A stretch of DNA of 41,738 nt from Octopus bimaculoides (lineage: Eukaryota). The stretch covers positions 39,513,471 through 39,555,208 of the forward strand of contig NC_068987.1 in the NCBI RefSeq assembly GCF_001194135.2, given 5' to 3'. The position numbers and the translations under genes are program-made. This document shows positions 6,074 through 38,416 of this stretch, piece after piece (within the stretch, counting starts at the first letter, position 1; each line of letters starts with the position of its first letter). The notes beneath the pieces are model-generated. The model was not told the DNA's origin. It did not search any database and worked only from the letters and a program-made list of their open reading frames with translations.

Positions 6074-7861
6074 CTGTAACAGAAAGAGATACTTTAGACA
6101 TTGTCAATAAAATTTTATTTAGAGATAAAAATACAAGGCAAAAGTAGAAAAGATGAATTCTTCCATATCTACAGTTGATGCAAACACTAGTTAAGAACCT
6201 GCATATAACCATTCTTTTTGGAAATACTGTGTGGACCAATGTTCCCAAGTCTATGTCTACCATGGTGATTTTCAACCATTACAAACAGAGCATATATTTT
6301 CATCAATCATGTAGTACTTACCCATTCTCATTATATTCCTATACCTGACCGGTATATAAATTTATACTCAATTTACATAACATTGTACAATACACGAGAT
6401 GATTCTTTTAGTGTATGTGCATGTGTCTCAGGTCGTTTTTTAGTGCTACTGGTAACATGTAACCCAGTACAACTTGTTGCATAGTCGGGTCATCTGTGAT
6501 TAAAGTGCAAACTCCACCAAGCTTGCTTGGTGGCAAGGAGGGTGATTTTGGACATCCTGTGGGACAAAAAACAAAACCTATCATGAGAGTCAATGGCCAT
6601 ACAATAATGTGCGCGTTAACACATATGGTGTGTATATTCAACAAGATCCATGCCAAGCAAAAGACACCTTGAGTATGCCTAGACCACCAACCTTTAAAAA
6701 GCAAATTGGCGAGCAGTTCACTTAAATGTATAGCACTGCTTCTTTTGCTTTGCAAAATCTGCACGATTATGATAAATCAAGTCAGAAACCTGAATTTGTA
6801 ACCTAGTCAGCACCTGACATGCAGCACATCGTGCACTAGCACAAGCCATGCTCTACAGGGAGAGTGTGTTTTGTGAACGACAAGCAAAGTCTACTATAAT
6901 TAAATTCATAGTGCAGGTCATTCAGTCACAAGAATACAAAAAGAAAAAAAAATCCTATGGCAATGAAGTGATAGTGACAAAGATAGGTGGAGGATACCAC
7001 TGGTGGTCTCTAGCTGGAGCTTTGCACATATCGTGGTAAGAAGTAGATGGCATTCTGTGAAACATCTGTGAGCAATTTCATAGTTTGCATCCTGTTAACT
7101 ACAAAGCAGTTTCTTTAGGATGACATTGCTTTCCCATATAAAGAAGGAGGTTAGAAAAGATGCTCTAAAAATTGTTTGCTCACTCAATCCTGTCATCCTA
7201 CTGCAGGTGACAGGATGTTCAACAATGCAGTTGAAATAATGAAGAAAACAAAATTAAAAAAAAAAAATCAAACAAATATTTTTGTGCAGCTGGGAATGTA
7301 CATACACTACAAGACCATAAGAAACTTCCAGAATGAAGAACAGCACTTGTTGCTCATGTTCTGAAATAAAAGCATAACAATATTGCTGCACTCTCAGAGA
7401 CAAGACTTCGAGTATGTAGGCAGCTGAAGTAATTAGTGGTAACCTAGTTAGCATCTGGATCAGTAAATCTGAGACAAAAAAAAGGGAATCAGGCATAGGG
7501 TTTGCAATCAAGAATGAGTTAGCAAACAAGCATGATTCTCTACAGATCAGAGTAAGTGAACATCTTTTGACACTTCAAATTTTAATTAGCTCTCATAGAT
7601 ACGCTACACTTATCAATGCATATTCTCTAACTTAAAATTCTATAGACACTGCCATGAAGTAAGTTCTATTCTGATTTGAAAGAATTGCTGAAGAGAGATC
7701 CATGCAATGACAAGATTGTTCTAATGAGAGATTTTACTGCTGTGAGCAGGCTTAGACTATCTTAATTGACAGACATGGAATTATCAAAATAAACTCAAAT
7801 GGGCTCCTGCTTCTTTCCATGTGTAGTGAGTTTGGACTTTGTGTAATCAATATTCCCTTTC

Positions 7862-9096
7862 TGTTGTGGAGATCGCTAACCAATAGAATTCAAAGTTCTG
7901 GAACTCGCGAGAAAGTTCATAGGTGTCTCGATTTTTGGTTTACGCTATTATTAATCTTGAGTATTACAGTTGAATAAACAGACTTCACACCTATCTCGAG
8001 TACCACTGTGTTTTTTTCTTTGCTAGTCGATGAGAGAAGTATATTTAATCACAGACAACACACCTATCTGGATTATTACTCTATTCTTTGTAAGTAAACA
8101 AGAGAAATATAACAGATTTGTGCCGCCAGTAGGATACTGTCATCATTTTTGTGAAGTGGACTTCTTACAATAGGATAAGAAAGACTATTCTTGCAGAGTG
8201 GACGTTTTACCTTGACACTCAGATATAATTATCTGGAAGGTAAACAACCAGTTTTGCACATAAGCTTCATTTTAGATAAAACTATAATTTAACTATTTTC
8301 ACATTAATAACGATGGTGAAACAAAGCAGTGAGCTGATAAAGTTACTCACACAACTTCAATTTCAGAGAGAACAAATGGGGAAGATATGGAAGCTTTCAG
8401 AAGGCTGATTCAAGTTCAAGTTTCTAAAACCATTTGTTGCTTTTGACACAGCATCTGAATTGTGGCCTGATTACTGGTCAACAATTCTGTACCTTTATTA
8501 TGGCAAATGCTGTGCCTGACCAGTGCAAGGCTCAAATTTTTTTTTGACAAATTAAACAGTTGCCATTTATAAACAACTGGCAAATCTGGCTACTCAACAG
8601 TCCACTAGAGGATATTAACAAGCTGACAATGGAGGAAATTGCCAGCTTTATGAAGGAACAATTTAACCCAAAACATTTCATTGTGCAGAAACGCAAAGAC
8701 AGACCAGATACTTCTATCCAAAACCAAACTGCTTGTACCAAAGTATGAACCGGACAACTCCAGACAATCCAAAAGAACACTCAAACCTAGAAAGAGACTT
8801 CATTGTTGATTCTTCTAGTGTAACATCAGTTTCGGTGGGGAGGTGTTGTGGAGATTGCTAGCCAATAGAATTCAAAGTTCTGGAACTTGCGAGAACATTC
8901 ACAAGGTGTCTTGATTTTTGGTTTACGTTATTATTAGTCTTGAGTTTTACAGTTGGAATAAACAGACTTCACTTATCTGCAATACCACTGTGTTTTCTTC
9001 TTTGTGAGTAAATGAGAGAAGTATATTGAATCACAGACAACACACCTACCTGGATTACTACTCTGTTCTTTGCAAGTAAACAAAAGAAATATAACA
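7862..9096 (+). mobile_element. Non-autonomous (internally deleted) Ty3/Gypsy LTR retrotransposon, two 253-bp LTRs, 5-bp TSD
   Basis: LTRs at 7862-8114 and 8844-9096 with TGTT...AACA termini. TSD CTTTC at 7857-7861 and 9097-9101. PPT GGTGGGGAGG at 8834-8843. Gag-like remnants FVAFDTASELWPDYW and DINKLTMEEIASFMKEQFNPKHFIV in the internal region. Confidence 0.93.
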
Positions 9097-10245: not shown

Positions 10246-11280
10246 AACAATCTTCCTAGAACTGCCTATCTGAAATGGGAAGTTGAGCAAGTCCTCTGCA
10301 CATATTTCATGAACATAGCTGTTGTAATTAACAGCTGTGCAATGGTGCATCCCCAGCTCTTCAACCCAAAACTGGACTGAAGTCAATGCCTTGACCCATG
10401 AATAAAGGGGGAAAAAAGCAGTACAGTCCGAAGAGGAAGGGTGTCACATTCCAAGATGTATCATTAACAGACACTCACTGCATCCTTTTTGGGAGCACTG
10501 CTAGTAAATTTTCCCACAAAGCATCTTGTTCATGTAGTGTCTTTTTGTACATAGTTTTCTTTTAGGGATAACACATTTCGCATCCTTCTTGGTTTTCAAT
10601 TTCTCCATCATATTTGAAAGGTTAAATGAGTTTGTTGCAGTCGGGAAAACACATAGTTCAAAATTATGAAAATGAGATAATGATAGGACAGAAACTGAAA
10701 ATTTCTATTTGTTGTGCAAAAAGACATAGGTGAAAATGACAAAAATGAGGTAATACAAATGTTCAAAAAATAAGCATTTGTCAAAGAAAATAGACAGATA
10801 AAGACAATACACATGGTTGGAGTATAGCAGACTATACTTTGGCTTGTTACTATGGAAACAGGCATCAACATGTCAGTTGCTTTCAAATGGCTAAATTTAC
10901 ACAAAATTTGCAAACTGTGACAGCAACAGAAACGATCCCATTGATTGTATGACACAGGTGCTTGTTTACAGCCATCATGTGATGTCACAAGGGTACACAC
11001 AAACTCACATACATTTACATACATAAACATATGTAAACTGTAAAATTCAGGAGGTATGAGAGATATATGTATACATACCAAATTTTCTCTTTATATATAC
11101 AATGTATAGAAGACTGAGACAGATAAAATTAGTTTATTGATCAGTAACAATAAAGACCTATTGTTTCATATCAATTAAGGTGCTAGGTTGAAGTTCAGGG
11201 AAGTAACCATCCTTAATGTTAATAAAAAGCAAGAAGGGATAAAAAGAAGTAGTTAAAGTAAATATAGAAAAATAATTAGC

Positions 11281-12239: not shown

Positions 12240-13272
12240 TATAAGGCAAGGAAGAAAATGGAGAAGAGATTCAATTGACAAAGATCTATTCTTTTACAAT
12301 CATAGGAATAAATAAATAAATACACCTCTTACAACTGTTTCTACTTTGGGAGTCTAGTATGCCAAAGTTGACACATCATACAAAAATTGAATATCAAAGC
12401 ATCATCAGAGAGTCCCTAATGGTAAGAAGTAAAAAAATGAAGTCCAAGGTTATATCCAGAAGTTGTGAGATCATGTCTTATTTCAATTTGATGGAGGAAA
12501 TAATAAAGATAAACGTTATAGGGTGGGGTTAATGGGATGATCCTTATAACAGGGGTCATTAGCTAGAAACTAAAAATTATGCAATAGAATAGTAATAAAA
12601 TTTAGTTAGGGTAATCATTTGGAGAATCATTACGTAAAGAAATAATTTCGGTATATTAAGTGTGATATTATTTACTAACAAATGAATGTCATCATAATAC
12701 TCCTATGATAAGTGAGGTAAGACCAATGTCAATCCTTACAACGTAATTGGTCAGCTAATATTAAAAAAAGTAGCGTTTTATTGGGTACGTTACAAAACAA
12801 ATTTATGAAAGATTCAGGGACAATTTAAGAAGAAATTGTCTAAGGGGCCTTAAATACTAAGGAGGATAATAAAAATAAACATATACGAAAGGAATCTGTT
12901 ATGTTATGAATACTTCTAACATAATTTTCTAATTGAAAAAATAATTTTGTAACTGAAAAAAATTTTTCATTTTTGTGAAATATAGCTCAAGGGAGGTAAC
13001 TGTGCAAAACATAAATATTGAAATATACGAAAAGCTTTTGGTTTTACCAACAACTGGTATACTAAAACACTTTAATGTTAACATGAATAAGCTTTTTACG
13101 AAAAACATGAATATTTGGTAATCATGCAAGGGAAATAGATATTTTAGACTTTCATTAAAAAAAACTGTAGGGTTAATTATATGCATACACTTATATCACT
13201 AAATGTATATTGGTAAATACGTACAAATACGAACTAATATATGTGCTTGCACAAATGTTCTGAAAGTTTTAT
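12240..13272 (+). repeat. ~1 kb repeat copy A (inverted partner of 18100-19161), probably Penelope-like
   Basis: Block-by-block reverse-complement match to 18100-19161. A weak GIY-YIG-like peptide FIGYVTKQIYERFRDNL lies at ~12778. The first ~165 bp upstream (12100-12265) also recur directly at ~15640-15805. Confidence 0.85.
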
Positions 13273-13275
13273 ATA

Positions 13276-14165
13276 TCATCATCATAATCGTTTAACGTCC
13301 GCTTTCCATGTTAGCATGGGTTAGACGATTTGACTGAGGACTGATGATCCAGATGGCTACACCAGGCTCCAATCTGATTTGGCAGAGCTTCTACAGCTGG
13401 ATGCCCTTCCTAACGCCAACCACTCCGAGAGTGTAGTGGGTGCTTTTACGTGCCACCGGCACGAAGGCCAGTCAGGCGGTACTGGCAACGGCCACGCTCA
13501 AAATGGTGTATTTTACGTGCCACCTGCACAGGAGTCAGTCCAGCGGCACTGGCAACGAACTCACTCGNNNNNNNNNNNNNNNNNNNNNNNNNNNNNNNNN
13601 NNNNNNNNNNNNNNNNNNNNNNNNNNNNNNNNNNNNNNNNNNNNNNNNNNNNNNNNNNNNNNNNNNNNNNNNNNNNNNNNNNNNNNNNNNNNNNNNNNNN
13701 NNNNNNNNNNNNNNNNNNNNNNNNNNNNNNNNNNNNNNNNNNNNNNNNNNNNNNNNNNNNNNNNNNNNNNNNNNNNNNNNNNNNNNNNNNNNNNNNNNNN
13801 NNNNNNNNNNNNNNNNNNNNNNNNNNNNNNNNNNNNNNNNNNNNNNNNNNNNNNNNNNNNNNNNNNNNNNNNNNNNNNNNNNNNNNNNNNNNNNNNNNNN
13901 NNNNNNNNNNNNNNNNNNNNNNNNNNNNNNNNNNNNNNNNNNNNNNNNNNNNNNNNNNNNNNNNNNNNNNNNNNNNNNNNCCTCATCCCAGGTCTTCCTG
14001 GGCCTGCCACTTCCACAGGTTCCCTCAACTGCTAGGGTGTGGCACTTTTTCACACAGCTATCCTCATCCATTCTCGCCACGTGACCATACCAGCGCAATT
14101 GTCTCTCTTGCACACCACAACTGATGCTTCTTAGATTCAACTTTTCTCTCAAGGTACTTACACTC
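13276..14165 (-). mobile_element. RTE LINE 3' portion spanning an assembly gap
   Basis: Minus strand: VSTLREKLNLRSISCGVQERQLRWYGHVARMDEDSCVKKCHTLAVEGTCGSGRPRKTWDE, then 3' UTR and (GAT)n tail at 13276. Confidence 0.9.
13568..13980. other. Assembly gap (N)
   Basis: 413 N. Confidence 1.
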
Positions 14166-14379
14166 AACTGGAACCCTCGTCGTCATAACCGACAGAGTGT
14201 CACGACGACAGTTAATGTGCATAGTGGAGGTTAGCATATGGTGAAATATACTTGTTATTTACATTTGACGGATATTTGTCCTCATCTTGTTTGTTGTTAA
14301 CACAACGTTTCAGCTGATAAATCCTTATAACCTGTATTTTTGAGTGCTACATTACATTTTTCTTTATGTTTATTAAAGT

Positions 14380-15849: not shown

Positions 15850-16692
15850 GATAACAAGCATGTGTTTAAGTGGTACACGTAAATGAATGATATCAGCCAA
15901 TAAATACATACACATATATATGAAGATGAATGAATAATAATAGATGAGTGTACAGAAACAAATCACTTATGCCCATTTCTACCATGAAGCCTCAGAATCT
16001 TCCAAGTCATCTTCATCATGTCAATGATATACATGTATGAAGAAACATTGGACAGAGATTGGGTTGAGCATCAAGGCTTCTTCAGAGATTACAAATATGA
16101 GGAAACTAACATGTGGGAAATTCAGTTAGAATGATAGAGTTGGGTCAATAAGATAAGATAGAGTAAAATAGGTAGAAAATAAAAAATAATGTAATAGACA
16201 TGGTAAGGAAAAGTAAGAACTTCATTTCAAGGTGTTATTATAATCCATGGTATTCCATCCTGTGGTAAGTAAAGTCACTCTAAGGAGATACATCCGTAGG
16301 CTGCAGTTTACATCATGTTTCCATTATACTGAGGGAAAGAGTGAAGGTAGTATGCTATGTGGTGGGTTGAATGATATGGTCCGTGCTACAGGGTTCAGCG
16401 GTTAGAGGCTAAACACTATTTAATAGATATAGCAATATTAAAGGAGTTGGTCAAAATAACTTAAATTGAACCTGTTGGGGAGAAATTAATACATAACTAC
16501 ATTAATGAAAGAAAAGAATATTTGTTCATCCTTGTATATCACTGAAAGGATGAGGATGACTTGGAAGGCTGTAAGTGATTTGTATTTGTACACTCACCTA
16601 TTATTATTCATTCATCTCCATATTATATATGCTTACATATTTATTGGCTGATCTCAGTCATTTATTTGCACCACTAAAACACGTTTGTTATT
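15850..16692. repeat. Element bounded by ~160-180 bp imperfect inverted repeats (15850-16033 / 16533-16692)
   Basis: atcagccaataaata..gatgaatgaataataatagatgagtgtaca..cttccaagtcatcttcatc matches the reverse complement of gatgaggatgacttggaag..tgtacactcacctattattattcattcatc..tatttattggctgat. Confidence 0.8.
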
Positions 16693-16696
16693 TTCT

Positions 16697-17017
16697 TATT
16701 TGCCATCTCCTTCATTGGACACTAAACTCGGCTTGCGAAGACCTGTAGGGGCAAGTGAAAACGAAATCGTGATGGCACCTGTGCTCAGTGTCGCCTCCCT
16801 GGCACTTGTGCCGGTGGCATGTGTAAAAGACATTTGAGCAAGATCGTTGCTAGTGCTGCTGGACTGGCTCCTGTGCAGGTGGCACGTAAAATAAACCATT
16901 TTGAGCATGGCCATTGGCAGTACCGCCCAACTGGCCTTCGTGCCGGTGGAACGTAAAAGCACCCACAACGTGCAACCCATGCTAGCATGGAAAGCAGACG
17001 TTAAATGATGATGATGA
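16697..17017 (+). mobile_element. RTE 3' UTR copy (sense, internally deleted) ending in (GAT)n
   Basis: Reverse complement of the 17350-17700 sequence. Ends aacccatgctagcatggaaagcagacgttaaatgatgatgatga. Confidence 0.85.
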
Positions 17018-18005
17018 TCATCATCATCGTCGTTTAACGTCCGCTTTCCATGCTAGCATGGGTTGGACGATTTGACTGAGGACTAGTGAAACCAGATGGC
17101 TACACCAGGCTCCAATCTGATTTGGCAGAGTTTCTACAGCTGGATGCCCTTCCTAACGCCAACNNNNNNNNNNNNNNNNNNNNNNNNNNNNNNNNNNNNN
17201 NNNNNNNNNNNNNNNNNNNNNNNNNNNNNNNNNNNNNNNNNNNNNNNNNNNNNNNNNNNNNNNNNNNNNNNNNNNNNNNNNNNNNNNNNNNNNNNNNNNN
17301 NNNNNNNNNNNNNNNNNNNNNNNNNNNNNNNNNNNNNNNNNNNNNNNNNNGGGTGCTTTTACGGGCCACCGGCACGAAAGCCAGTCAGGAGGTACTGGCA
17401 ACGGCCACGCTCAAAATGGTGTATTTTACGTGCCACCCACACAAGAGCCAGTCCAGGGGCACTGGCAACGATCTCGCTCAAAAGTCCTTACACATGCTGT
17501 GGGCACAAGTGCCAGAAAGGCGATGCTGAGCACAGGTGACATCACGATTTCGCTTTCGCTTTACCCAACAAGACTTCGCAAGCTGAGTTTCGTGTCCAAT
17601 GAAGGAATCGACATTGGCATGGGTGCCAGTCATCGAATTTAACTCGATTTCGTTTACACTTGCCTCAACAGGTCTTCGCAAGTGGAGTTTAGTGTCCAAT
17701 GAAGGAAGGTACGCATAAGTGGACTGGCTGAGGCCTTAGATTTAGGTCTCACTTGGATTGCCGGGTCTTTTCACGCACAGCATATTTCCAGTTGGCAGAT
17801 TTTCTACAGCTGGATGCACCACCTAACGCCAACCACTCAGAGAGTGCAGTGGGTGCTTTTACGTGCCAACGGCACGGAGGCCAGTCAGGCGGTACTGGCA
17901 ACGGCCATGCTCAAAATGCCAGGGGCACTGGCAATGATATCCCTCGAAAGTCCTTACACATGCCGCGGGCACAAGTGCCAGAAAGGCGACGCTGGGCACA
18001 GGTGC
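17018..18005 (-). mobile_element. RTE 3' UTR copies (antisense): one at 17018-~17745 across a gap, a second partial copy at ~17780-18005
   Basis: Same 3' UTR motifs as 13276-13567 (ggtgcttttacgtgcc, ggtactggcaacggccacgctcaaaatgg). Confidence 0.85.
17164..17350. other. Assembly gap (N)
   Basis: 187 N. Confidence 1.
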
Positions 18006-18099
18006 TATGTATGTGCGTGTATATATGTATGTATTTATATATGAATAAAATACATGTGTGTGTGGATATATATGTATACACATATATATATATATATGG

Positions 18100-20394: not shown

Positions 20395-20960
20395 TATATA
20401 CATAATAATATATAAATGTACATGCATGTATGGATACACAATTATAAATACATAGTAAATCCTATACAGATGCACTTCCATACATGTACATTCAATGGAC
20501 CCCTACACATATGCAGATATACATGTATACACATGCATATATATATATATANNNNNNNNNNNNNNNNNNNNNNNNNNNNNNNNNNNNNNNNNNNNNNNNN
20601 NNNNNNNNNNNNNNNNNNNNNNNNNNNNNNNNNNNNNNNNNNNNNNNNNNNNNNNNNNNNNNNNNNNNNNNNNNNNNNNNNNNNNNNNNNNNNNNNNNNN
20701 NNNNNNNNNNNNNNNNNNNNNNNNNNNNNNNNNNNNNNNNNNNNNNNNNNNNNNNNNNNNNNNNNNNNNNNNNNNNNNNNNNNNNNNNNNNNNNNNNNNN
20801 NNNNNNNNNNNNNNNNNNNNNNNNNNNNNNNNNNNNNNNNNNNNNNNNNNNNNNNNNNNNNNNTATATATATATATAATAATAATACAAAGAATATATAT
20901 ACATGTATACACACATATATGTACATACTTACATCTACATGTGTATATACATGCATATCA
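20395..20960. repeat. (TA)n/(TACA)n low-complexity region around a gap
   Basis: Directly visible. Confidence 0.9.
20552..20863. other. Assembly gap (N)
   Basis: 312 N. Confidence 1.
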
Positions 20961-22811: not shown

Positions 22812-25090
22812 GCAGATGCGAACATTATTGAACCTAGTAACTCCACTTGGAGATCGCAAGTGTTAGTTGTTCAAGAAAAATAAAGCAAAGAATGGTGATT
22901 GAATACTCAGAGACGATTAACAAATTTACACAGCTACCCCCTTCCTAAAATTGATAAGTTAGTGAACACTATCGCTAAGTATAAAGTCTACAGTACTATA
23001 GACTTACGTTTGGCATACAATCAGATTCCTCTATCAGAGAAAGACCATCAATTCACTGCCTTTGAAGCTGATGGTAAATTATGGCATTATACTAGGATGC
23101 CATTCAGAGTAACTAATGGCAGCACATGTTTGCAACATATAATGGACGACTTTGTGAGTAAATACAAACTGCGAGATACGTTCCCATTCATAGACAATTT
23201 AACCATATGTGGGAAAGATCAAAATGATCACGATAAAAATTTAGGAAAATTTGAAATGGCAGCAAAAAGTGAAGGGCTTACCATGAATGAAGACAAATGT
23301 GTTTACTCAACAACTCTTGACTTTCTTGGATACCGTATCTCACACAATACCCTCAGCCCTGACCCAGAAAGACTTGCTCCACTCCTCAATCTTCCTACAC
23401 CAACTGACCAGAAATCATTAAAACGTATAGTCGGTATATTTTCTTATTATGTTAAGTGGATCTCCAAATTTTCGAACAAAATATATCCTCTAAATAACGT
23501 ATTAAAATTTCCTCTAAACAACCAACAAGTAAAAGCATTTGAGTCATTAAAGGTAAAACTAGCCAATGCTGCCATTCAAGTAATAGATGAGAACATTCCA
23601 TTTACTGTTGAGACGGAGGCTTCAGATTTTTCCATATCTGTGACACTAAATCAAGATGGAAGGCCAGTCGCATTCCATTTTCATACACTGCAAGGTAGCG
23701 AACAGTACCACTACTCAGTTGAAAAGGAAGCCCAAGCAATTATTGAATCAATTCATCATTGGAGACACTTTCTTCTAGATAGACATTTTACATTAATAAC
23801 TGTTGCATTCATGGATAATTATAAAGCAACGAGCAAAATTAAAAATGATAAAATTATGAGATGGCGCATTGCGTTATCTCCATACTCATATGATATTCAC
23901 TATTGCCCAGGATCCAGCAACATCACTCCAGATGCATTCACAAGGGTACGCTGTTCAGCAATTAGTTCACATTCACTTTATGAGTTACATGCAGCACTGT
24001 GCCATCCTCGTGTAGTACGCCTTCATCATTTCGTCCACAGTAGAAATCTTCCATATTCATTAGAGAACGTGAAACAAATATGTAGGAATTGCTCTATATG
24101 TCAAGAAGTGAAACCACAATATTATAAACCAGACTCAGTTAACTTAACTAAGGCCATGCAGCCCTTCAAGTGAATTTCCATCAATTTCAAAGGTCCGATT
24201 CCTTCCATGAAGCATCCTTATCTCCTAACAATACTTGACGAGTACTCTCGGTTTCCGTTTGGTTATCCAGTATCTGACAAATCAGCTCAGACTGTAATAA
24301 AGTGTCTTACAGACTTGTTCTCAGTTTTTGGTATGCCCAGTTGTGTATGTTCAGATCGTGGAACTGCCTTTATGTCTAGAAGTTGCAATGTAAGGACATT
24401 GCAACGAGTAGGAGGACACCATACAATCCCACTGAGAACAATCAAGTAGAAAGATATAATGGTATTATTTGGAAGTCAGTACTACTCTCTTTGAAAACCC
24501 ATGCCCTTCCAGTATCTTCATGGGAAACAGTTCTTCCAGATGCGTTGCATTCAATCAGATCTCTACTTTGTACGTCCTCATGGACATCTTTTTAACTATC
24601 AAAGACGTTCAGCAGCAGGAACATCTATGCCAACATGGCTTCTTAACCCAGGACCTGCGCTTGTTCAAAGGAACAATCACACTAACAAGTATGACCCTAT
24701 TGTGGACCAAGTTGATTTAATCGAAGCCAACCCCCAATACGCTCACGTCCATTATCCAGATGGTTGCGAAACCACAGTATCCACAAAACAATTGGCATCA
24801 CCAGGGAAGATTAACCCAACTGATAACCTAACCCAAACATGTCCCTCAAGAGCCAGACAGGGAGCCAACTGAAATTTCTCCTCCTCCTAGAGATAACTGT
24901 CAAGAACAAAAAGAAGAATCCCCTCAGCAGTGTCGATCACAAAGGATTCGGTAAGCCCCAGAAAGGCTTGATCTATGATTTGTTTCCCTTCTTTTTCCAA
25001 GAGAGAGTGAATGTTATGCAAATAACACTGATATAAAGAGCATGTGCATGACAGGAAGAGGAAGAGAGAGAACAGCCATTCAGAATAACA
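22812..25090 (+). mobile_element. 5'-truncated Ty3/Gypsy pol (RT-RNase H-integrase) with PPT and a short 3' LTR; decayed
   Basis: IIEPSNSTWRSQV, YPLP, IDLRLAYNQI, MPFRVTNG, FIDN, FLGY; RNase H ETEASD..YSVEKEAQAI..HWRHFL; Zn-binding H..H..CSIC; integrase DEYSR, SDRG, YNP..NNQVER across frameshifted ORFs 22899-24872. PPT aagagagagtgaa at 24999-25011. TGTTAT...ATAACA at 25012-25090. Confidence 0.93.
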
Positions 25091-27755: not shown

Positions 27756-27796
27756 CAAAGTAGTGCCCAAATTTTCAATAACAGGAATTTTATAGC
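27756..27796 (-). CDS. SNRPA1: U2 snRNP A' coding exon 2 (41 nt)
   Basis: tttcag|GC TAT AAA ATT CCT GTT ATT GAA AAT TTG GGC ACT ACT TTG|gtgaat = (G)YKIPVIENLGTTL. Phase 1 in and phase 0 out fit both neighbouring exons. Confidence 0.96.
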
Positions 27797-28147
27797 CTGA
27801 AATACAATAAGACAATTTTATTAGGAGAGCCAAATTTATGTAATTATATAAGTGGTTCCCAACATTTACTCAAATGACACTCATGTTTATTCAATGTAAA
27901 GCAGTAAAAAATGTAGTTCATTGTTAATAACTGTACAAAAATTAGAGAAAATACAGGAGTTGTTTGTGCTTTTTGAAATATATACGCTTTCAAATAGCGA
28001 CAAAATTTTAGAATATTTTGTCACTCAATAAACTGACTAAAAATACAGGCCTCACCACTGAAATGTTGCGACATTTGAGCTAGGAAGCAGTTGTGTGTCT
28101 GAAACAGTTTATTTACAATTGTTTGTTGTTAATATTTAAAATTCATA

Positions 28148-28347
28148 GGCGGCGAGCTGGCACAACCGTTAGTACGCCGGACAAAATTCTTAGCGGCATT
28201 TCGCCCTTCTTTACGTTCAAATTCCGCTACATTGCCTTTCATCCTTTAGGAATTGATACAATAAGTACCAATTGAGAAGTATTACCAATGTAATCGACTT
28301 ACTCCAACCCCCGAATTGCTGGCTTTGTGTCAAAATTTGAAACCAAT
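28148..28347 (+). mobile_element. SINE in SNRPA1 intron 1
   Basis: ggcgagctggcacaaccgttagtacgccgg..cttagcggcatttcg..gttcaaattccgc..ttgcctttcatccttt..aataagtacc: a tRNA-like head plus a conserved central SINE domain. Confidence 0.7.
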
Positions 28348-28669
28348 ATTTAAAACTCACACATAGTTTTTAAAAAATTATTTTTGTCAAAGCTTCAAGT
28401 TAAAACAACAAATTTCATTAATCTAACTTGTCTATATTGATTTTTATACAAATTGTACGTAACAGAACAATTTGAAAATGCACAAAAGTTTCATTTTTCA
28501 GCTAGTATTAAGTTAATTTTTTAATTTCATGACGCATAAAGAGAGTTATACATGTATGATAATAATATTCTTTTGAGATAATAACACGAACATAAATTTA
28601 TTAAGCGATATCATTAGAAATTAGAAAGTTTGTTGATTAAAGAAAAGATCAAGAAGGAAACATGATTAC

Positions 28670-28751
28670 CTCGGAGATCTAATTCACGGTCTCTAACCGG
28701 GTTGGTATATTGAGCTGAATGTTCTATTAAGTCAGCAGATAGTTTAACCAT
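28670..28751 (-). CDS. SNRPA1: U2 snRNP protein A', coding exon 1 (82 nt)
   Basis: Reverse complement reads ATG GTT AAA CTA TCT GCT...CTC CGA G|gtaatc = MVKLSADLIEHSAQYTNPVRDRELDLR(G), near-identical to the U2A' N-terminus as I recall it (human MVKLTAELIEQAAQYTNAVRDRELDLRG). GT donor at 28669-28668. Too short for the ORF track. Confidence 0.97.
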
Positions 28752-29096
28752 TGTTGTTTGTTTAAGCCAACAAATTATTATCTTAACCACTCTAAATATA
28801 ATAATAATAATAATACACAGTCAGGTTGTTGAAAAGTATTTAACAACACACTCGTAAGTTTCAATTAGCAATAGAATAGAGGCCAAACACATGGAAGATT
28901 AATGGCGAATTGCGCCTGCGCGAAATAAGGGAGGTAATTCTGGTGAATTATCGTTGGGGGCGCTACTGAGTTTTTTAGCGTCTTCTTCTCGTCTTCCCTT
29001 TATAAGCAGACGACAGACAATCATTTGTTATCGCACTTCAATGGAATGTTAAATACTTTTATATAAAAAGAAACCAGTTCAGGCATTGCGTACAAG
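28752..29096. promoter_or_regulatory. Putative bidirectional promoter and 5' UTRs of SNRPA1 and SYCP1
   Basis: 345 bp between divergent ATGs. Local CpG cluster at ~28890-29035 in otherwise CpG-poor DNA. ATGGCG (YY1-like) at 28902-28907, TGCGCCTGCGC (NRF1-like) at 28911-28921, TATATAAA at 29060-29067. TSSs are not determinable from sequence. Confidence 0.7.
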
Positions 29097-31763
29097 ATGC
29101 AAAGTACTTTAGCATCGATGTCTCAAGTCTATGAGAAGACTGATCAAAATTTGGCAAACAGTTCTGAGTCTACAAACTATGGTCTCAGTTTAACAAAAAA
29201 ACTTAAAATGCCTCTTATTATGCATAAAAGTACAACTCTGCTTCAAACGTTCCAAGAAAATCTAGTCTCTAAAGAAAAAACAAAACAAGAGAAACAATCA
29301 TTAAATACTCAAGATGTAGAATGCAAACTATTTTCCCTGCATAGCCGACTCCGACAGGAAGCTGAAAAGATAAGGGAGTGGAAACTTTCCACAGAAGCTG
29401 AAAGCAAACAAAAAGAGAAAAAGATAGGGGAATTGACCCAAACTATTGAGAATCTTAGAAAATCTTTCATAGAATTGCAAATAGAAAATGAAAACTTAAG
29501 TCAAAAGATGCAAGAAGAAATTAGCAATAGAGAAGAAATTTTGAAAAAAATTGATTTTACTCGAAAAATGTGTAACATTGTCAAAGAACATTCTCAAACT
29601 GTAGAGAATAAAATGATGCAATGTGAAGCAGAAAGCAATGAATTAAAATATAAAGAAAGAGAACATTTTGAAAAATTTGAAGAACTTTCAGTAAAATTCA
29701 ATGATTTAAATATTTCAGCTAAAGATGAAGAAAATAAATTAAAAAATGAAATTAATAATATTTTTCAGGAGAAGGAAAAGCAGAGAAAAGTTTTAGAAAA
29801 GAGGATAGCAGATATGCAGAATATCAATAAGGAGTTACAGAATGAAATTTGTTGTAGAAATGAAAAGTTGGAACAATTAAATAAAGATTTACGTGATGCT
29901 GAAGAGGAGAAAGATCAACTAAAGTTTGATTATGAAGAATCTAAAAAAGGTCTTTCAGAAGTGGAATTTAAATACACAACCCTTAAATTTGAATCAACTG
30001 AGAAAAGTAATGAAGCTTTATTAATAAAGGCTTCTTTAGAAAATCTTTTAAAAGAAGCAAATGAAGTTTACGAAAAACTAGAAAAAGAATATGGAGAATT
30101 AAATGTTAAATATACATCAGCAAATAAAATGATTGAAGACTTGAAGAGTGATAAAGATATCTTAGTTTTGGAGAATGCAGAGTTGAGTGAAAATCTAAAA
30201 CAAGAAATAAGCCATAAAGACAATCTACTGGCCCAGTTAAATTCCAAATCTGCCAAGATAAATAACCTCAATAGCAACATTATATTGTTAAATGATGAAG
30301 TAGTCAATGCAAAGGCTTTAAATGTGGATGCTGCTGATATGCATGAAAAAACAAAAGAAAAACTTGAAACTTTAGAAGAAAAATACAAAACCCTAAGCAA
30401 TGAGTCAGAAGTACTAAAAGGCAAATTTCAAGAAAAAGTGGAACAATTAAATGAGGCCTTGAAAAACATTGAAGAACTTAGAAAAACATCTTCAGTTGAA
30501 TCTAATGAACTGACAAAAATTATATCAGAGCTAAGAAATGAAAATAATCTGCTGGAGGATGAAATATCTAATCTAAAAACACAAATGAAAAATCATGAAA
30601 GTAAATATTCTTCTCACATTGGCAAATTAAATAAAACAATTGAAGAAAATGCAATTTCAGTTAGTAAATATGCAGATATAGTGAAGGCAAAAGAAACAGA
30701 AATTGAAGAATATAAAGGTAAACTTCAAACAATACAAAAAGAAATTAATGAATGTCAACAAGAAAAAGTAGTCTTAATGGGTTATCAAGAAGAACTCAAA
30801 CAAATGACAATTTTGAAAGAAAATGCAATTCAAGATAAGGAGAGAATTTTAAAAGTAAGTGAAAATCAAAAAGAAGAAATGGTGAATACTCTTGAAAAGT
30901 ATAAAAAAGAAAATCAGAAAATATTTGACATTAAGACTAAAGAAATCTACGCAAAGAATGAAAATGAAATCAAAGAACAAAAATTGAAACATGAAAATGA
31001 TTTGAAAGAAAAAACAAGTGAATTTGAGAAAGAGATCTTACAGTATAAAAGTGAAATTTCTGAACTAAAACAGAATATCCAATATCAAATGGAGAACAAT
31101 ATCCAGCTTGAAGAAAAAATAGATATAATGCTAAAGGAGAAAGAAAATATGAAAAAGGAAATGTATGAAAATACTATGAAAACAGTGTTTCCGACAAGAA
31201 AACAACCTCAAGTGGCAGTCCTGATGACACCACAACATCCAATTAATATGACACCTTCAAGAATAGATGTTAATTCCTTTAAATCAAACTTCTTAACTTC
31301 CAAGAAGAGAAAAGTGGTGTTTAATTCTGATGATATGATACTTGTGTCTGATTCAGACTCCTCAGTATCCGAATACCAAAAGAATGACAAAATCACAATA
31401 CGGACCCCATTATTGAAACAACACCAGAAGAACATAAATTCACCCAAGAAGGATAATGTTTCTGATCATAAGTTAGAAGAGGTGGTCCTTACTACTGAGA
31501 ATCAACAAAATCTTGAAAATAACATTTCAGCAAGAAGTAGGAAAACCAGAATTTTGACTGGAAATAATAAGACCAAAAAAAGTCCAGTGAAACAAAATTT
31601 AAATACTGTTAAACCAAAGAGAGCAAATGTGAAAAAATCTGAAACTCAACCTGTGAAGAAGTTTTTCAAATCCCCAAAGTCTAAGAGATCACCAGCATCT
31701 TCAATTGATAAATATGCTTGGTTTGATATGGATTCTGTGTTTGGGTTTGGATCTGATGATTAA
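29097..31763 (+). CDS. SYCP1: Synaptonemal complex protein 1-like transverse filament protein, intronless 888-aa ORF
   Basis: aa ~78-163 (LHSRLRQEAEKIREWKLSTEAESKQKEKKI...LRKSFIELQIENENLS...TRKMCNIVKE) align without gaps to the conserved SYCP1 N-terminal coiled-coil motif as I recall it from human (VYSKLYKEAEKIKKWKVSTEAELRQKESKL...QRKAIQELQFGNEKVS...TRHLCNLLKE). This is followed by ~600 aa of E/K/L-rich heptads and a basic S/T-P-rich tail containing KKRKVVF..SDSDSS (cf. human KKRKMAF..NSDSSE). A at -3 of the ATG; in-frame TAA upstream at 29064. Confidence 0.92.
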   Translation: MQSTLASMSQVYEKTDQNLANSSESTNYGLSLTKKLKMPLIMHKSTTLLQTFQENLVSKEKTKQEKQSLNTQDVECKLFSLHSRLRQEAEKIREWKLSTEAESKQKEKKIGELTQTIENLRKSFIELQIENENLSQKMQEEISNREEILKKIDFTRKMCNIVKEHSQTVENKMMQCEAESNELKYKEREHFEKFEELSVKFNDLNISAKDEENKLKNEINNIFQEKEKQRKVLEKRIADMQNINKELQNEICCRNEKLEQLNKDLRDAEEEKDQLKFDYEESKKGLSEVEFKYTTLKFESTEKSNEALLIKASLENLLKEANEVYEKLEKEYGELNVKYTSANKMIEDLKSDKDILVLENAELSENLKQEISHKDNLLAQLNSKSAKINNLNSNIILLNDEVVNAKALNVDAADMHEKTKEKLETLEEKYKTLSNESEVLKGKFQEKVEQLNEALKNIEELRKTSSVESNELTKIISELRNENNLLEDEISNLKTQMKNHESKYSSHIGKLNKTIEENAISVSKYADIVKAKETEIEEYKGKLQTIQKEINECQQEKVVLMGYQEELKQMTILKENAIQDKERILKVSENQKEEMVNTLEKYKKENQKIFDIKTKEIYAKNENEIKEQKLKHENDLKEKTSEFEKEILQYKSEISELKQNIQYQMENNIQLEEKIDIMLKEKENMKKEMYENTMKTVFPTRKQPQVAVLMTPQHPINMTPSRIDVNSFKSNFLTSKKRKVVFNSDDMILVSDSDSSVSEYQKNDKITIRTPLLKQHQKNINSPKKDNVSDHKLEEVVLTTENQQNLENNISARSRKTRILTGNNKTKKSPVKQNLNTVKPKRANVKKSETQPVKKFFKSPKSKRSPASSIDKYAWFDMDSVFGFGSDD

Positions 31764-36720: not shown

Positions 36721-37296
36721 TAAGATAACAGGTCAACCCCCAATGAAATCTATTGTTCTCAACAATATGTCTCTCCTAGTTAGTTTGGATAATTATAAAT
36801 ACAAGAACTCTATAACTCTATAAGTTAAAGTCAGTTGGTGAGAATCGAGTTTGGCTGACCAGCTAAACAAAATGCCATCTCTGAAGGAACAACTATGATA
36901 ACTCACCAACGAAGCAGTTGTTTCATCCCACCACTCTCGCTTTTACTGGCTTACTTTCTGTTCTCTACAACATTACCCTATCTCTATCTGTGGTTTACTA
37001 CTATGCAATGATGAGAACACAAACACACCTATACAAAGAAAATCTACGATATCTCTTTTTACCTCGCATGTTTTACAAATTTATCATACCAACCCATCAT
37101 GTTTGACTACAACAAAGTAACAGTAAATAAATGTTTGTTTACAACTTTGATTACTATTCTTCTTTCATTTTACACATCTGCAACAGCAACACCTGTTACA
37201 ATCATTAACTGCCAAGAATCAACATCTATCACTACACATACTGTTACAACTGGCAACCCTCGACAATAACAATTATAACAATACCGTTACAACCTT

Positions 37297-38416
37297 TTCT
37301 TGCGTCTGGAGCCAAGACTTTACCTCGGAAATAAGTTCGTCATCATCTGAAAAGCGCTTCCCCTTCAAAAACGAATTCATGGTTGGAAAGAGGTGGAAGT
37401 CAGATGGTGTGAGGTTGGGAGAGTAAGGGGGATGAGAAAGGATTTCATAGCCACAAGAGTGTGCTTTCATCTGGGTAATATGTGCATTGTGAACTGGGGT
37501 GTTGTCTTGGAGGAGGCAAACTCCTGTGGTCAGCATGCCACGCCTCTCTGCTTTGATGGCATCCCACAATTTCTGCAGCAGAGAAGCATAATATGTCCTG
37601 TTAATTGTGTGCTCTTTGCCAGAAAATCTATCACCACTACTCTGCGCTGATCCCAAAAGACTGTGAGCATCACCTTACCTGCTGAGGGTTGGACATGAGC
37701 CTTCTTTGGAGGTGCTGAGTTATCATGCTTCCATTGCTTCAACTGAACTTTAGTCTCAGGATCATAGTGATGGACCCATGTTTCATCCTGTGTGATAAGT
37801 CTGCAAAAAAAGTCCTCTTCATTTTCTTGGCACATTGCTAAAGGAGCCTGAGAGCAATTGACTCGTTCCTGCTTCAGAAAAGATGCAAGCATCAAGGGAA
37901 TTCATTGTGCAAACAATTTCCACATGTGCAAATGGTCGTGAATGATTTTTTCCATGGACCCTACACTTATCTTCACTTCCTGAGCTAGTTGTTGAATAGT
38001 TATGCCGTGATCCTCTAAAATGGCGGCTTCCAATTTATGGATAGTGTCATCATCAATGGTGGAATGTGGTTGTCCAGGAATAGGACCAATTTCCATTGAT
38101 GTCTGACCACATTTGAACTGGCGATGCCAGTACTTGACTACATTGTATGATCATGCATTGTCACCATAAACTTCTTTCATCTCATCAAAAGTGTCTTTTG
38201 GTATACAACCTTTCAAGTATAAGAACCTGATCACTGATCTGCATTCAACTGCCTCCATTATATTATCTTAGTCCACTTCAGCAGCCGTAAAAGACAAACA
38301 AATACTAGTGGAAAGCTGCAATTTACAATGTGGTATGTAGGGACATGTATGATTATACCTGTACAAGTTCCATTTCCTGCAATAACCAGAAGTGAATCTT
38401 TAATGAATAGCCCTCG
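37297..38416 (-). mobile_element. Mariner (DD34D) transposon, 5' TIR present, 3'-truncated, inactive
   Basis: 5' end TA|CGAGGGCTATTCATTAAAAG at 38418-38397; ATG at 38258 (MEAVECRSVIRFL); TQDETW, LLQDN, HPPYSPNLTPSDF with 34 residues between the last two Asp (counted). Contains stops and a frameshift; ends at WLQTQ. Confidence 0.93.

What the first reader, a model, noticed from the sequence alone, without database searches (positions are those of the whole stretch)
28670..29099. Meiotic SYCP1 head-to-head with housekeeping SNRPA1 across 345 bp: promoter capture
Seen: divergent ATGs at 28751 (-) and 29097 (+). Between them is the window's only host CpG cluster, with adjacent YY1-like (ATGGCG, 28902) and NRF1-like (TGCGCCTGCGC, 28911) motifs, plus a TATA-like element (29060) on the SYCP1 side only. 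Known: NRF1 and YY1 sites are enriched at bidirectional housekeeping promoters in mammals, and retrocopies often become expressed by borrowing a neighbouring promoter. Inference: SYCP1 gained expression from the U2A' promoter. That creates a regulatory problem: either a normally meiosis-restricted, self-polymerising protein is transcribed in soma (possibly neurons), or some direction-specific or post-transcriptional silencing operates in this short interval.
Basis: partly seen in the sequence, partly recalled or inferred. Interest (0 to 1): 0.8.

Follow-up and report, generated by a model that had tools for sequence, protein, structure and literature searches.

The report
Octopus SYCP1 retrogene sharing SNRPA1's promoter
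In octopus the meiosis gene SYCP1 is an intron-free retrocopy sitting back-to-back, 345 bp away, with the housekeeping splicing gene SNRPA1; it seems to run on a hybrid promoter, part borrowed from SNRPA1 and part carried in on its own mRNA leader, a third independent case of something already described in amphioxus.

Summary
The window is Octopus bimaculoides. SNRPA1 (U2A') exon 1 starts at 28751 (-). An uninterrupted 888-codon SYCP1 ORF starts at 29097 (+). The 345 bp between them hold the only non-repeat CpG-preserved patch, a rare NRF1-type decamer and a YY1-like core.

The retrocopy reading is well supported:
- SYCP1 is single-exon in three Octopus species and in two unnamed, deeply divergent cephalopod-like contigs.
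- It is multi-exon in abalone (at least 25 coding exons over 33 kb) and scallop (31 kb).
- In scallop the two genes lie on different chromosomes.

Promoter sharing is supported indirectly:
- Scallop SNRPA1 has an NRF1 site at the same distance from its ATG (-161 to -170).
- A second SYCP1 locus without SNRPA1 still keeps that site.

New here: a motif, AAGCAGACGACA (29004-29015), also lies in the inferred non-coding exon 1 of scallop and abalone SYCP1 and in the amphioxus SYCP1 promoter. So the retrocopy probably brought its own leader. The TATA-like element lies inside the leader of a relative's transcripts and is not conserved.

No octopus transcription start or expression data could be obtained, so somatic or neuronal expression is untested. 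Amphioxus SYCP1-CHIC (Garstang & Ferrier 2018) is a close precedent, so this is a new member of a known kind.

The parts
28670..28751 (-). SNRPA1 (U2 snRNP A') coding exon 1, ATG at 28751, GT donor after 28670
   Evidence: Translation; PDB U2A' hits at E=6e-9; tblastn.
27756..27796 (-). SNRPA1 coding exon 2 (GYKIPVIENLGTTL). Intron 1 (27797-28669) holds a CpG-rich SINE-like element at about 28130-28320.
   Evidence: tblastn; sequence read; splice phase worked out by hand.
28752..29096 (.). 345-bp interval between the divergent start codons; candidate shared (bidirectional) promoter
28886..29035 (.). CpG-preserved core: 10 CpG, observed/expected 1.4, flanked by CpG-depleted DNA (0.20 in the SYCP1 CDS)
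28886..28907 (+). Conserved AACACATGGAAG...AATGGCG block, which includes the YY1-like core ATGGCG at 28902-28907
   Evidence: Alignments A1 and A4; shared 8-mers. L003 has the full consensus AAAATGGCGG.
28912..28921 (.). NRF1-type near-palindrome GCGCCTGCGC, 161-170 bp from the SNRPA1 ATG
   Evidence: Only site in the window. O. sinensis has GCGCATGCGC; L003 and L009 have ACGCATGCGC. Scallop SNRPA1 has ACGCATGCGC at -170 to -161. Rarity shown.
28929..28945 (+). Conserved GGGAGGTAATTCTGGTG block (AGATAAT-type), function unknown
   Evidence: Conserved in O. sinensis, L003 and L009.
28960..28985 (+). Inferred SYCP1 transcription start zone (polypyrimidine GCGTCTTCTTCT)
   Evidence: The 5' ends of transcript contigs L004 and L005 of a related species map here by alignment. 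Inferred, not measured in octopus.
29004..29015 (+). AAGCAGACGACA: ancestral SYCP1 leader (exon 1) motif carried by the retrocopy
   Evidence: Invariant in Octopus, L003, L009, L004 and L005. Exact in scallop SYCP1, just before a GT donor. A 9/10 match in abalone. Present in the amphioxus SYCP1 promoter (PMC5803294 Table S2). Background rate.
29056..29069 (.). TATA-like palindrome CTTTTATATAAAAAG; lies within the inferred 5' UTR and is probably not a TATA box
29097..31763 (+). SYCP1 single-exon CDS, 888 aa

Best explanation
The interval is a compact divergent promoter between SNRPA1 and a SYCP1 retrogene. That retrogene replaced the ancestral multi-exon SYCP1 before octopuses split from a second, deeply divergent cephalopod lineage.

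A nearly full-length spliced SYCP1 mRNA was reverse-transcribed and inserted about 85 bp from the NRF1 site of the SNRPA1 promoter. The copy kept the start of the ancestral leader, including the exon-1 motif AAGCAGACGACA. In octopus this motif is joined without an intron to the rest of the 5' UTR and the CDS.

SYCP1 is therefore transcribed from a composite promoter. Upstream activator sites (the NRF1 palindrome, perhaps the YY1-like core) are inherited from SNRPA1 and probably shared with it. A transcribed, start-site-proximal element of SYCP1's own is the second part. Transcription most likely starts around 28960-28985, giving a leader of about 110-135 nt with no upstream exon. SNRPA1 starts in the opposite direction somewhere between 28752 and about 28900.

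Shown: the gene identities, intronlessness, conservation of the adjacency, the outgroup gene structures, and the motif positions.

Inferred: the transcription starts in octopus, the shared use of the NRF1 site, and the function of the motifs.
For: 1. Intronless SYCP1 lies head-to-head with SNRPA1 exon 1 in O. bimaculoides, in O. sinensis and in the unnamed contig L003. L003's SYCP1 is only 36-38% identical to the octopus protein. Its true ATG is at 10274 and its intergenic interval is 386 bp.
2. Outgroups differ.
- Abalone SYCP1 has at least 25 coding exons over 33 kb and no SNRPA1 within 10 kb.
- Scallop SYCP1 spans 31 kb on a different chromosome from SNRPA1.
- The SNRPA1 neighbour is AP3D1 in scallop and an RGS-domain gene in oyster.
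- The literature gives 21 introns each for Aplysia and Lottia (PMC5803294 Table S1).
3. The word search finds one octopus SYCP1 cluster. In the exhaustive profile search, the top hits I could name include no second cephalopod copy.
4. NRF1-type decamers are very rare: 7 in 322 kb. Yet one sits 161-170 bp from the SNRPA1 ATG in octopus, 165-174 bp away in L003, and 161-170 bp away in scallop.
5. L009, an intronless SYCP1 locus with no SNRPA1 within 10 kb, still keeps the NRF1 site, the GATAAT block and the GCAGACGACA motif. These elements therefore serve SYCP1.
6. GCAGACGACA lies on the SYCP1 sense strand in the inferred non-coding exon 1. In scallop the match is exact and is followed by G|gtattc. 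In abalone it is a 9/10 match. The background is 6 other hits at up to 1 mismatch in 424 kb of strand. The same 11-mer lies at the start of SYCP1 5' UTR exon 1 in two amphioxus species.
7. Three transcript contigs of a relative start 0-46 nt upstream of the motif and are collinear with the L003 genome. Their 3' ends carry AATAAA.
8. A sharply bounded CpG-preserved core fits a germline-unmethylated promoter.
Against: - No octopus transcript, CAGE, methylation or accessibility data could be reached, so both transcription starts are inferred.
- Oyster SNRPA1 lacks any NRF1 site. The site may have been gained independently or lost in oyster.
- The octopus-L003 intergenic alignment beats shuffles (z=5.7, 0 of 500) but lies within the range of real intron-chunk controls (39 against a mean of 23.8 and a maximum of 46). 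Conservation rests on short motif blocks, not on overall alignability.
- Between O. bimaculoides and O. sinensis the interval is no better conserved than introns.
- No poly(A) remnant or target-site duplication is visible. This is expected for an old event but it is not positive evidence.
- The taxon of L003 and L009 is unknown. Whether L009 is a paralogue or another species is unresolved.
- The motif was not found within 10 kb upstream of sea urchin SYCP1.
- The exon-1 assignments in scallop and abalone are inferred from splice-site sequence, not from transcripts.
Confidence: 0.65

Rival explanations
1. In-situ intron loss. An intron-containing SYCP1 first came to lie next to SNRPA1 through a rearrangement in the cephalopod stem. 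It then lost all its introns through recombination with its own cDNA. Nothing was 'captured': SYCP1 kept its own promoter, which merely abuts that of SNRPA1.
For: The ancestral exon-1 motif is retained upstream of the CDS, as in-situ conversion would also predict. No poly(A) tract or target-site duplication is visible. L009 keeps the whole module without SNRPA1.
Against: It needs two rare events instead of one. The NRF1 site matches the position of scallop SNRPA1's site, and scallop SYCP1's own promoter has no NRF1 site. No outgroup examined shows the adjacency. SYCP1 retroposition is documented repeatedly elsewhere (PMC5803294).
Confidence: 0.12
2. Two independent back-to-back promoters. The NRF1/YY1-like block and everything to its right serve SYCP1 only. 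SNRPA1 is driven by separate elements within 28752-28885. The genes are neighbours without shared regulation, so no somatic SYCP1 transcription is implied.
For: L009 shows the block is retained for SYCP1 alone. Oyster SNRPA1 works without an NRF1 site, with a 41-52 nt leader and a proximal AAAATGGCCGG. NRF1 is active in meiotic germ cells in mouse (PMC6719441).
Against: Scallop SNRPA1 has the only NRF1-type site in 76 kb of scallop sequence, at the same distance from its ATG. The whole interval is only 345 bp with a single CpG-preserved core of about 150 bp, which leaves little room for two separate nucleosome-free regions.
Confidence: 0.18
3. The SYCP1 ORF is an unexpressed or decaying retropseudogene. 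The functional SYCP1 lies elsewhere and is unannotated.
For: No octopus transcript was retrieved here. Protein evolution is fast: codon-position identities are 97.7, 98.4 and 96.5% between two Octopus species.
Against: The 888-codon ORF is intact in three Octopus species, and intact homologous ORFs occur in L003 and L009 at 36-38% identity. The CM1 region and the C-terminal motif are conserved. Full-length transcripts of the relative's orthologue (P0002) were assembled in three runs. No other cephalopod SYCP1 turned up among the named hits of an exhaustive profile search.
Confidence: 0.03

Closest known systems
Amphioxus SYCP1 retrogene next to CHIC (Garstang & Ferrier 2018, PMC5803294)
   Same: A single coding exon has replaced the multi-exon parent. 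It lies head-to-head with a broadly expressed neighbour, and co-option of that neighbour's bidirectional promoter was proposed. The promoter contains a YY1-type AAAATGGCG and the same GCAGACGACAT 11-mer.
   Different: The partner gene differs (CHIC, not SNRPA1) and the event is independent. Amphioxus evolved a multi-exon 5' UTR and no CpG island was found there. The cephalopod gene appears to start about 110-135 nt from its ATG with no leader intron, inside a CpG-preserved patch with an NRF1 site. That paper used the octopus mRNA only for phylogeny and described lophotrochozoan SYCP1 genes as multi-exonic.
Ciona single-exon SYCP1 and mouse Sycp1 retrocopies (as cited in PMC5803294)
   Same: They show that SYCP1 is repeatedly retroposed and can replace its parent.
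   Different: They lie at different loci, and no shared-promoter architecture is reported for them. They were not examined here.
Mammalian CpG-island bidirectional promoters enriched for NRF1, YY1 and GABPA sites (general knowledge, recalled from memory)
   Same: Head-to-head genes lie less than 1 kb apart. The promoter has no functional TATA box, is CpG-preserved, and has NRF1 and YY1-like sites between the two starts.
   Different: Here one partner is normally a meiosis-restricted gene. The YY1 match is core-only. Nothing about occupancy or co-expression is known.
[quoted passage not shown] 2009, as cited in PMC5803294)
   Same: The general mechanism by which a retrocopy becomes expressed.
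   Different: Those cases usually gain new 5' exons to reach a distant promoter. Here the copy landed within about 85 bp of the activator site and kept its own leader.
Drosophila downstream promoter element (DPE, RGWYV, e.g. AGACG) and MTE-DPE arrangement (recalled from memory)
   Same: The motif contains AGACG, lies downstream of the inferred start, and is transcribed.
   Different: The +28 to +32 spacing could not be verified, and rough estimates in scallop and abalone do not fit it. This is a resemblance only.

Membership tests
Processed retrogene with replacement of the parent | Intronless coding sequence where orthologues in outgroups have many introns | tested here: met
   Single ORF at 29097-31763. 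The same holds in O. sinensis, L003 and L009. Abalone has at least 25 coding exons over 33 kb; scallop's gene spans 31 kb.
Processed retrogene with replacement of the parent | Leader exons joined as in spliced mRNA | tested here: met
   The GCAGACGACA motif is followed by a GT donor and an intron in scallop and abalone. It is contiguous with the leader and CDS in cephalopods. The exon boundaries in the outgroups are inferred from sequence, not from transcripts.
Processed retrogene with replacement of the parent | New genomic location relative to outgroups | tested here: met
   Scallop SYCP1 is on LR736842.1 beside a MutS-family gene, while scallop SNRPA1 is on LR736841.1 beside AP3D1. Abalone has no SNRPA1 within 10 kb.
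Processed retrogene with replacement of the parent | Poly(A) remnant and target-site duplications | tested here: inconclusive
   Nothing is recognisable downstream of the stop codon in AT-rich sequence. Decay is expected for an event this old.
Processed retrogene with replacement of the parent | No surviving parental copy | tested here: inconclusive
   Only one octopus SYCP1 cluster appears in the word-based search, and no second cephalopod copy among the named top hits of the profile search. These cover predicted proteins only. A whole-genome tblastn was not possible.
Bidirectional (divergent) promoter | Head-to-head genes with starts less than 1 kb apart | tested here: met
   The start codons are 345 bp apart, 342 bp in O. 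sinensis and 386 bp in L003. The transcription starts themselves were not measured.
Bidirectional (divergent) promoter | A single unmethylated, accessible region spanning both starts | not testable with these tools
   Only a proxy is available: one core of about 150 bp with CpG observed/expected 1.4, flanked by 0.2-0.4.
Bidirectional (divergent) promoter | Cis-elements used by both genes | not testable with these tools
   Indirect only. The NRF1 site is at the same distance from the SNRPA1 ATG in scallop, and it is retained with SYCP1 alone in L009.
Bidirectional (divergent) promoter | Divergent transcripts and correlated expression | not testable with these tools
   No octopus RNA data were reachable. 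The look-up of the octopus SNRPA1 protein found no transcript contig.
SYCP1 (synaptonemal complex transverse filament) | SCP-1 domain with the conserved CM1 region, a long coiled coil and a conserved C-terminal motif | tested here: met
   Pfam PF05483 at 6.6e-17. PDB SYCP1 6f62 at 1.4e-15. Invariant CM1 columns and the WFDxDSxFGFGxDD end appear in the alignment.
SNRPA1 / U2 snRNP A' | N-terminal U2A' sequence and LRR_9 exons | tested here: met
   P0087, the 246-aa O. bimaculoides protein, is 99% identical to the concatenated exons.
TATA-box core promoter on the SYCP1 side | A TATA box about 25-35 bp upstream of the transcription start, conserved among relatives | tested here: not met
   The TATA-like sequence is 28-37 bp from the ATG. 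Its counterpart lies inside all three transcript contigs of the relative. It is absent in L003 and L009. The motif is common in this AT-rich DNA.

The most novel reading that the evidence does not exclude
SYCP1 mRNA carries a transcribed core-promoter element at its 5' end (RAGCAGACGACR, with a DPE-like AGACG). The element is conserved from molluscs to amphioxus. Because it is transcribed, every full-length retrocopy arrives with half a promoter and needs only a nearby activator site, such as the NRF1 site of a housekeeping gene. This would explain why SYCP1 has been replaced by its own retrocopy at least three times (amphioxus, Ciona, coleoid cephalopods) and why two of those copies sit on bidirectional promoters.
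Probability: 0.25. Interest if true: 0.8.

Novelty: new member of a known kind. Interest (0 to 1): 0.55.

Why it matters
- It adds a third independent replacement of the essential meiotic gene SYCP1 by its own retrocopy, and a second case in which the copy sits on a housekeeping gene's divergent promoter. This points to a repeatable route rather than an accident.
- The anatomy is unusually clean. A 345-bp interval holds one ancestral element from each gene about 85 bp apart. That makes a natural test bed for how one short promoter can give ubiquitous output in one direction and, presumably, germline-restricted output in the other.
- The deeply conserved leader motif is a concrete candidate for a meiotic core-promoter or leader element, and it has apparently not been described.
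- Practically, a promoter of about 350 bp could be useful for germline expression in emerging cephalopod models.

Tried and rejected
- Octopus SNRPA1 transcripts. The look-up of the 246-aa protein found nothing on record. The homologue search returned no cephalopod RNA contigs. The SNRPA1 start therefore remains inferred.
- Run accessions SRR8281661, SRR8281680 and SRR8281681 were not found in any paper, so the tissue and species of the SYCP1 transcripts are unknown.
- AP3D1 downstream of octopus SYCP1 would have shown insertion into a pre-existing SNRPA1-AP3D1 pair. No match was found within the window; the downstream 10 kb holds transposon remnants.
- Plain blastn between the octopus and L003 non-coding DNA finds only the exons.
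- Octopus-octopus footprinting is uninformative: 92-94% identity everywhere.
- Patella SNRPA1 is not on record.
- Sea urchin SYCP1 has no convincing motif within 10 kb upstream.
- A quartet analysis could not decide whether L009 is a paralogue of L003 or an orthologue from another species.
- Rfam and tandem-repeat scans found nothing relevant.
- A literature search for NRF1 regulating Sycp1 gave no direct statement.
- The strict DPE reading of the motif was considered. It was not adopted as a finding, because the spacing cannot be verified.


Full report
**Where the window comes from and what is at the coordinates**

The 888-aa ORF is encoded on Octopus bimaculoides chromosome CM046607.1 (GCA_001194135.2).

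On the minus strand, the ATG at 28751 opens MVKLSADLIEHSAQYTNPVRDRELDLRG, followed by a GT donor after 28670. This is the N-terminus of U2 snRNP A' (SNRPA1): human U2A' chains in the PDB match at E=6e-9. Further exons lie at 27796-27756, 9440-9336, 6072-5950 and 2983-2864. The concatenated exons are 99% identical to the O. bimaculoides protein P0087.

On the plus strand, the ATG at 29097 opens an uninterrupted 888-codon ORF. It hits Pfam SCP-1 at 6.6e-17 and the human SYCP1 structure 6f62 at 1.4e-15.

**The motifs and the CpG cluster**

Their weight differs.

- The NRF1-type decamer GCGCCTGCGC (28912-28921) is the only site in the window. It scores on both strands; 0.19 matches are expected and 7 of 100 shuffles reach 2. 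Five of them sit at SNRPA1 or SYCP1 promoters.
- The YY1 match is only the six-base core. It fails the nine-base consensus by two bases.
- TATA-like octamers are common in this AT-rich DNA: 32 in the window.
- CpG observed/expected is 0.33 for the window, 1.4 for the 150-bp core 28886-29035, and 0.20 for the SYCP1 CDS.
- Every other CpG-rich stretch is a multi-copy repeat. The exception is a SINE-like element in SNRPA1 intron 1; that identification is from memory only.

**Is SYCP1 a retrocopy?**

The octopus protein has one close cluster, covering O. sinensis and O. vulgaris at 96% identity. O. sinensis has the same head-to-head arrangement with a 342-bp gap.

Three more distant relatives at 36-38% identity were found:

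- P0002, assembled as roughly 3-kb transcript contigs in three sequencing runs (L004-L006).
- P0003 on L003.
- P0374 on L009.

L003 and L009 are genomic contigs of one ENA assembly, ERZ21867824. Both encode SYCP1 as a single ORF. Their taxon is not named. I infer decapodiform cephalopods for two reasons. Octopus is by far their closest named relative (E=2.5e-117, against 5e-60 for a gastropod). Their SNRPA1 exons are also nearly identical to those of octopus.

Outgroups differ:

- Abalone SYCP1 spans 33 kb with at least 25 coding exons.
- Scallop SYCP1 spans 31 kb.
- Published counts give 21 introns each for Aplysia and Lottia (PMC5803294 Table S1).

An exhaustive profile search of 1.84 billion representatives found no second cephalopod SYCP1 among the top hits I could name.

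I conclude with high confidence that coleoid SYCP1 is a retrogene that replaced its parent. A pseudogenised parent cannot be excluded without a whole-genome search.

**Is the adjacency derived?**

L003 also has SNRPA1 exon 1 head-to-head with SYCP1. The called ORF there starts at a TTG and reads through the promoter. The true ATG is at 10274, giving a 386-bp gap.

In scallop, SNRPA1 and SYCP1 are on different chromosomes. SNRPA1 faces AP3D1 and SYCP1 faces a MutS-family gene. Oyster SNRPA1 faces an RGS-domain gene. Abalone SYCP1 has no SNRPA1 within 10 kb.

**Whose promoter is it?**

Three results bear on this.

1. Scallop SNRPA1 has ACGCATGCGC at -170 to -161 from its ATG. It is the only NRF1-type site in 76 kb of scallop sequence. 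The octopus site is at -161 to -170 and the L003 site at -165 to -174. Given a background of about 6e-6 per base, a chance match of position is unlikely. This points to an ancestral SNRPA1 element. Oyster SNRPA1 has none, so the support comes from one of two bivalves.

2. L009 has no SNRPA1 within 10 kb. It nevertheless retains TTACGCATGCGCAAAG, a GAAGATAATTC block and TAAGCAGACGACATTTTT upstream of its SYCP1. At this divergence (77% nucleotide identity in the CDS) neutral DNA is unalignable. These blocks are therefore kept for SYCP1's own sake. Whether L009 is a paralogue or another species is unresolved.

3. The 12-mer AAGCAGACGACA (29004-29015) is invariant in Octopus, L003, L009 and the transcripts.
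- It recurs on the sense strand upstream of scallop SYCP1. There the match is exact and is followed immediately by G|gtattc, with an acceptor just before the ATG.
- It recurs upstream of abalone SYCP1 as a 9/10 match, 18 nt after AGATGGCG, with a donor about 110 nt downstream.
- Only six other hits at up to one mismatch occur in 424 kb of strand.
- The same 11-mer, GCAGACGACAT, appears in the predicted CHIC-SYCP1 promoter of two amphioxus species (PMC5803294 Table S2). By my reading of those printed sequences it is sense to SYCP1 5' UTR exon 1.

Together these results suggest a composite promoter. The NRF1 site came with SNRPA1. The GCAGACGACA element came in on the SYCP1 mRNA leader. The junction lies somewhere in the 83 bp between them.

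**Where transcription starts**

The transcript contigs L004-L006 end with AATAAA-type 3' ends. They begin 46, 28 and about 0 nt upstream of the motif and are collinear with L003. Transferred to octopus, this places the SYCP1 start at or upstream of about 28960-28985. That is 40-65 bp downstream of the NRF1 site, with no upstream exon.

The TATA-like element at 29056-29069 then lies inside the leader. Its counterpart is inside all three transcripts and is missing from L003 and L009. I do not regard it as a TATA box.

The SNRPA1 start could not be located. Oyster SNRPA1 leaders are 41-52 nt.

**Limits**

- The octopus-L003 intergenic alignment beats shuffles (z=5.7) but falls within the range of real intron-chunk controls.
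- The two Octopus species are too close for footprinting.
- Nothing here measures expression, methylation or accessibility.
- The suggestion of neuronal expression has no basis in the data I could reach.

**Comparison with what is known**

Garstang and Ferrier (2018, PMC5803294) described amphioxus SYCP1 as a single-exon retrogene that replaced its parent and co-opted the bidirectional promoter of CHIC. They noted that Ciona SYCP1 is also single-exon. They used the O. bimaculoides mRNA in their phylogeny, but their intron table has no cephalopod and the text calls lophotrochozoan SYCP1 genes multi-exonic. Full-text searches found no report of the cephalopod case.

The finding is therefore a new member of a known kind. 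Two additions seem new: the positional conservation of the SNRPA1 NRF1 site, and the deeply conserved SYCP1 leader motif.

A short Sycp1 promoter fragment suffices for meiotic expression from a viral vector in mouse testis (PMC11234267). This is compatible with a compact, partly transcribed SYCP1 promoter. I did not verify the extent of that fragment.

**Verdict**

- The retrogene reading has confidence of about 0.9.
- Promoter sharing or capture has confidence of about 0.65.
- The carried-in leader element has confidence of about 0.5.
- The TATA-box reading is rejected.
- The somatic-expression problem remains open.
- Interest is moderate at 0.55.

Noticed in passing
29004-29015 (+); L010 8779-8788; L008 9235-9244; L003 10148-10157; L009 9866-9875: The motif RAGCAGACGACR lies on the SYCP1 sense strand near the 5' end of the gene in octopus, two unnamed cephalopod-like contigs, scallop and abalone. 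The same 11-mer is printed in the amphioxus CHIC-SYCP1 promoter sequences of PMC5803294. It contains a DPE-like AGACG. It was not found upstream of sea urchin SYCP1.
   Followed up: partly
L009 9780-12709: A second intronless SYCP1 locus (P0374, 62% identical to P0003) occurs in the same ENA assembly as L003. It has no SNRPA1 within 10 kb but carries the same NRF1, GATAAT and GCAGACGACA blocks. Whether it is a paralogue or another species in a mixed sample is unresolved.
   Followed up: partly
22899-24173 (+): A 424-aa ORF with reverse transcriptase, RNase H and integrase zinc-binding domains. This is a Ty3/gypsy-type retroelement fragment inside the 18-kb SNRPA1 intron 2.
   Followed up: yes
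37273-38096 (-): Three adjacent ORFs with mariner-type DDE transposase and helix-turn-helix matches: a decayed DNA transposon downstream of SYCP1.
   Followed up: yes
1-350, 1001-1300, 7851-8050, 13251-14350, 16651-18050: These CpG-rich stretches are copies of one another or of other places in the window. Several abut runs of N (13568-13980, 17164-17350, 20552-20863), which suggests assembly gaps inside repeats.
   Followed up: partly
28130-28320: A CpG-rich element (GGCGGCGAGCTGGCA...TTCAAATTCCGC...) in SNRPA1 intron 1. It is single-copy in the sequence held here and resembles the abundant octopus SINE as I remember it. It is 93.7% identical in O. sinensis, like the surrounding intron.
   Followed up: no
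29041-29067 (+): Two very short upstream ORFs (ATG at 29041 and 29046) lie in the inferred octopus SYCP1 leader. They are absent from the leaders of L003, L004 and L009.
   Followed up: no
window minus strand up to 28751; L001, L002: Gene models for the SNRPA1 locus disagree. The product is 836 aa in the O. bimaculoides v2 annotation, 157 aa in O. sinensis and O. vulgaris ('trichohyalin-like'), and 246 aa in UniRef. This is probably fusion or truncation of the models.
   Followed up: no
L014-L016; L012 3640-4030: Oyster RNA contigs join SNRPA1 to its divergent RGS-domain neighbour, which suggests overlapping head-to-head transcripts. The oyster SNRPA1 leader is 41-52 nt, with AAAATGGCCGG just upstream and no NRF1 site.
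   Followed up: partly
L003 10001-10273 and 12930-12961: The first 91 residues of P0003 are an artefact of a prokaryote-style ORF call from a TTG through the promoter. The L003 protein also ends FWFDTDFPKI and lacks the conserved SxFGFGxDD terminus. This may be a frameshift or an assembly error.
   Followed up: partly
L010 8720-8800: Scallop SYCP1 is head-to-head with a MutS-family gene 1.5 kb away. The sequence just before its exon-1 motif has a perfect ETS-type CCGGAAGTGG and a CACGTG E-box.
   Followed up: no
29097-31763: Between O. bimaculoides and O. sinensis the SYCP1 codon positions are 97.7, 98.4 and 96.5% identical. The third position is barely more diverged than the first, which indicates fast protein evolution. 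The ORF remains intact.
   Followed up: partly
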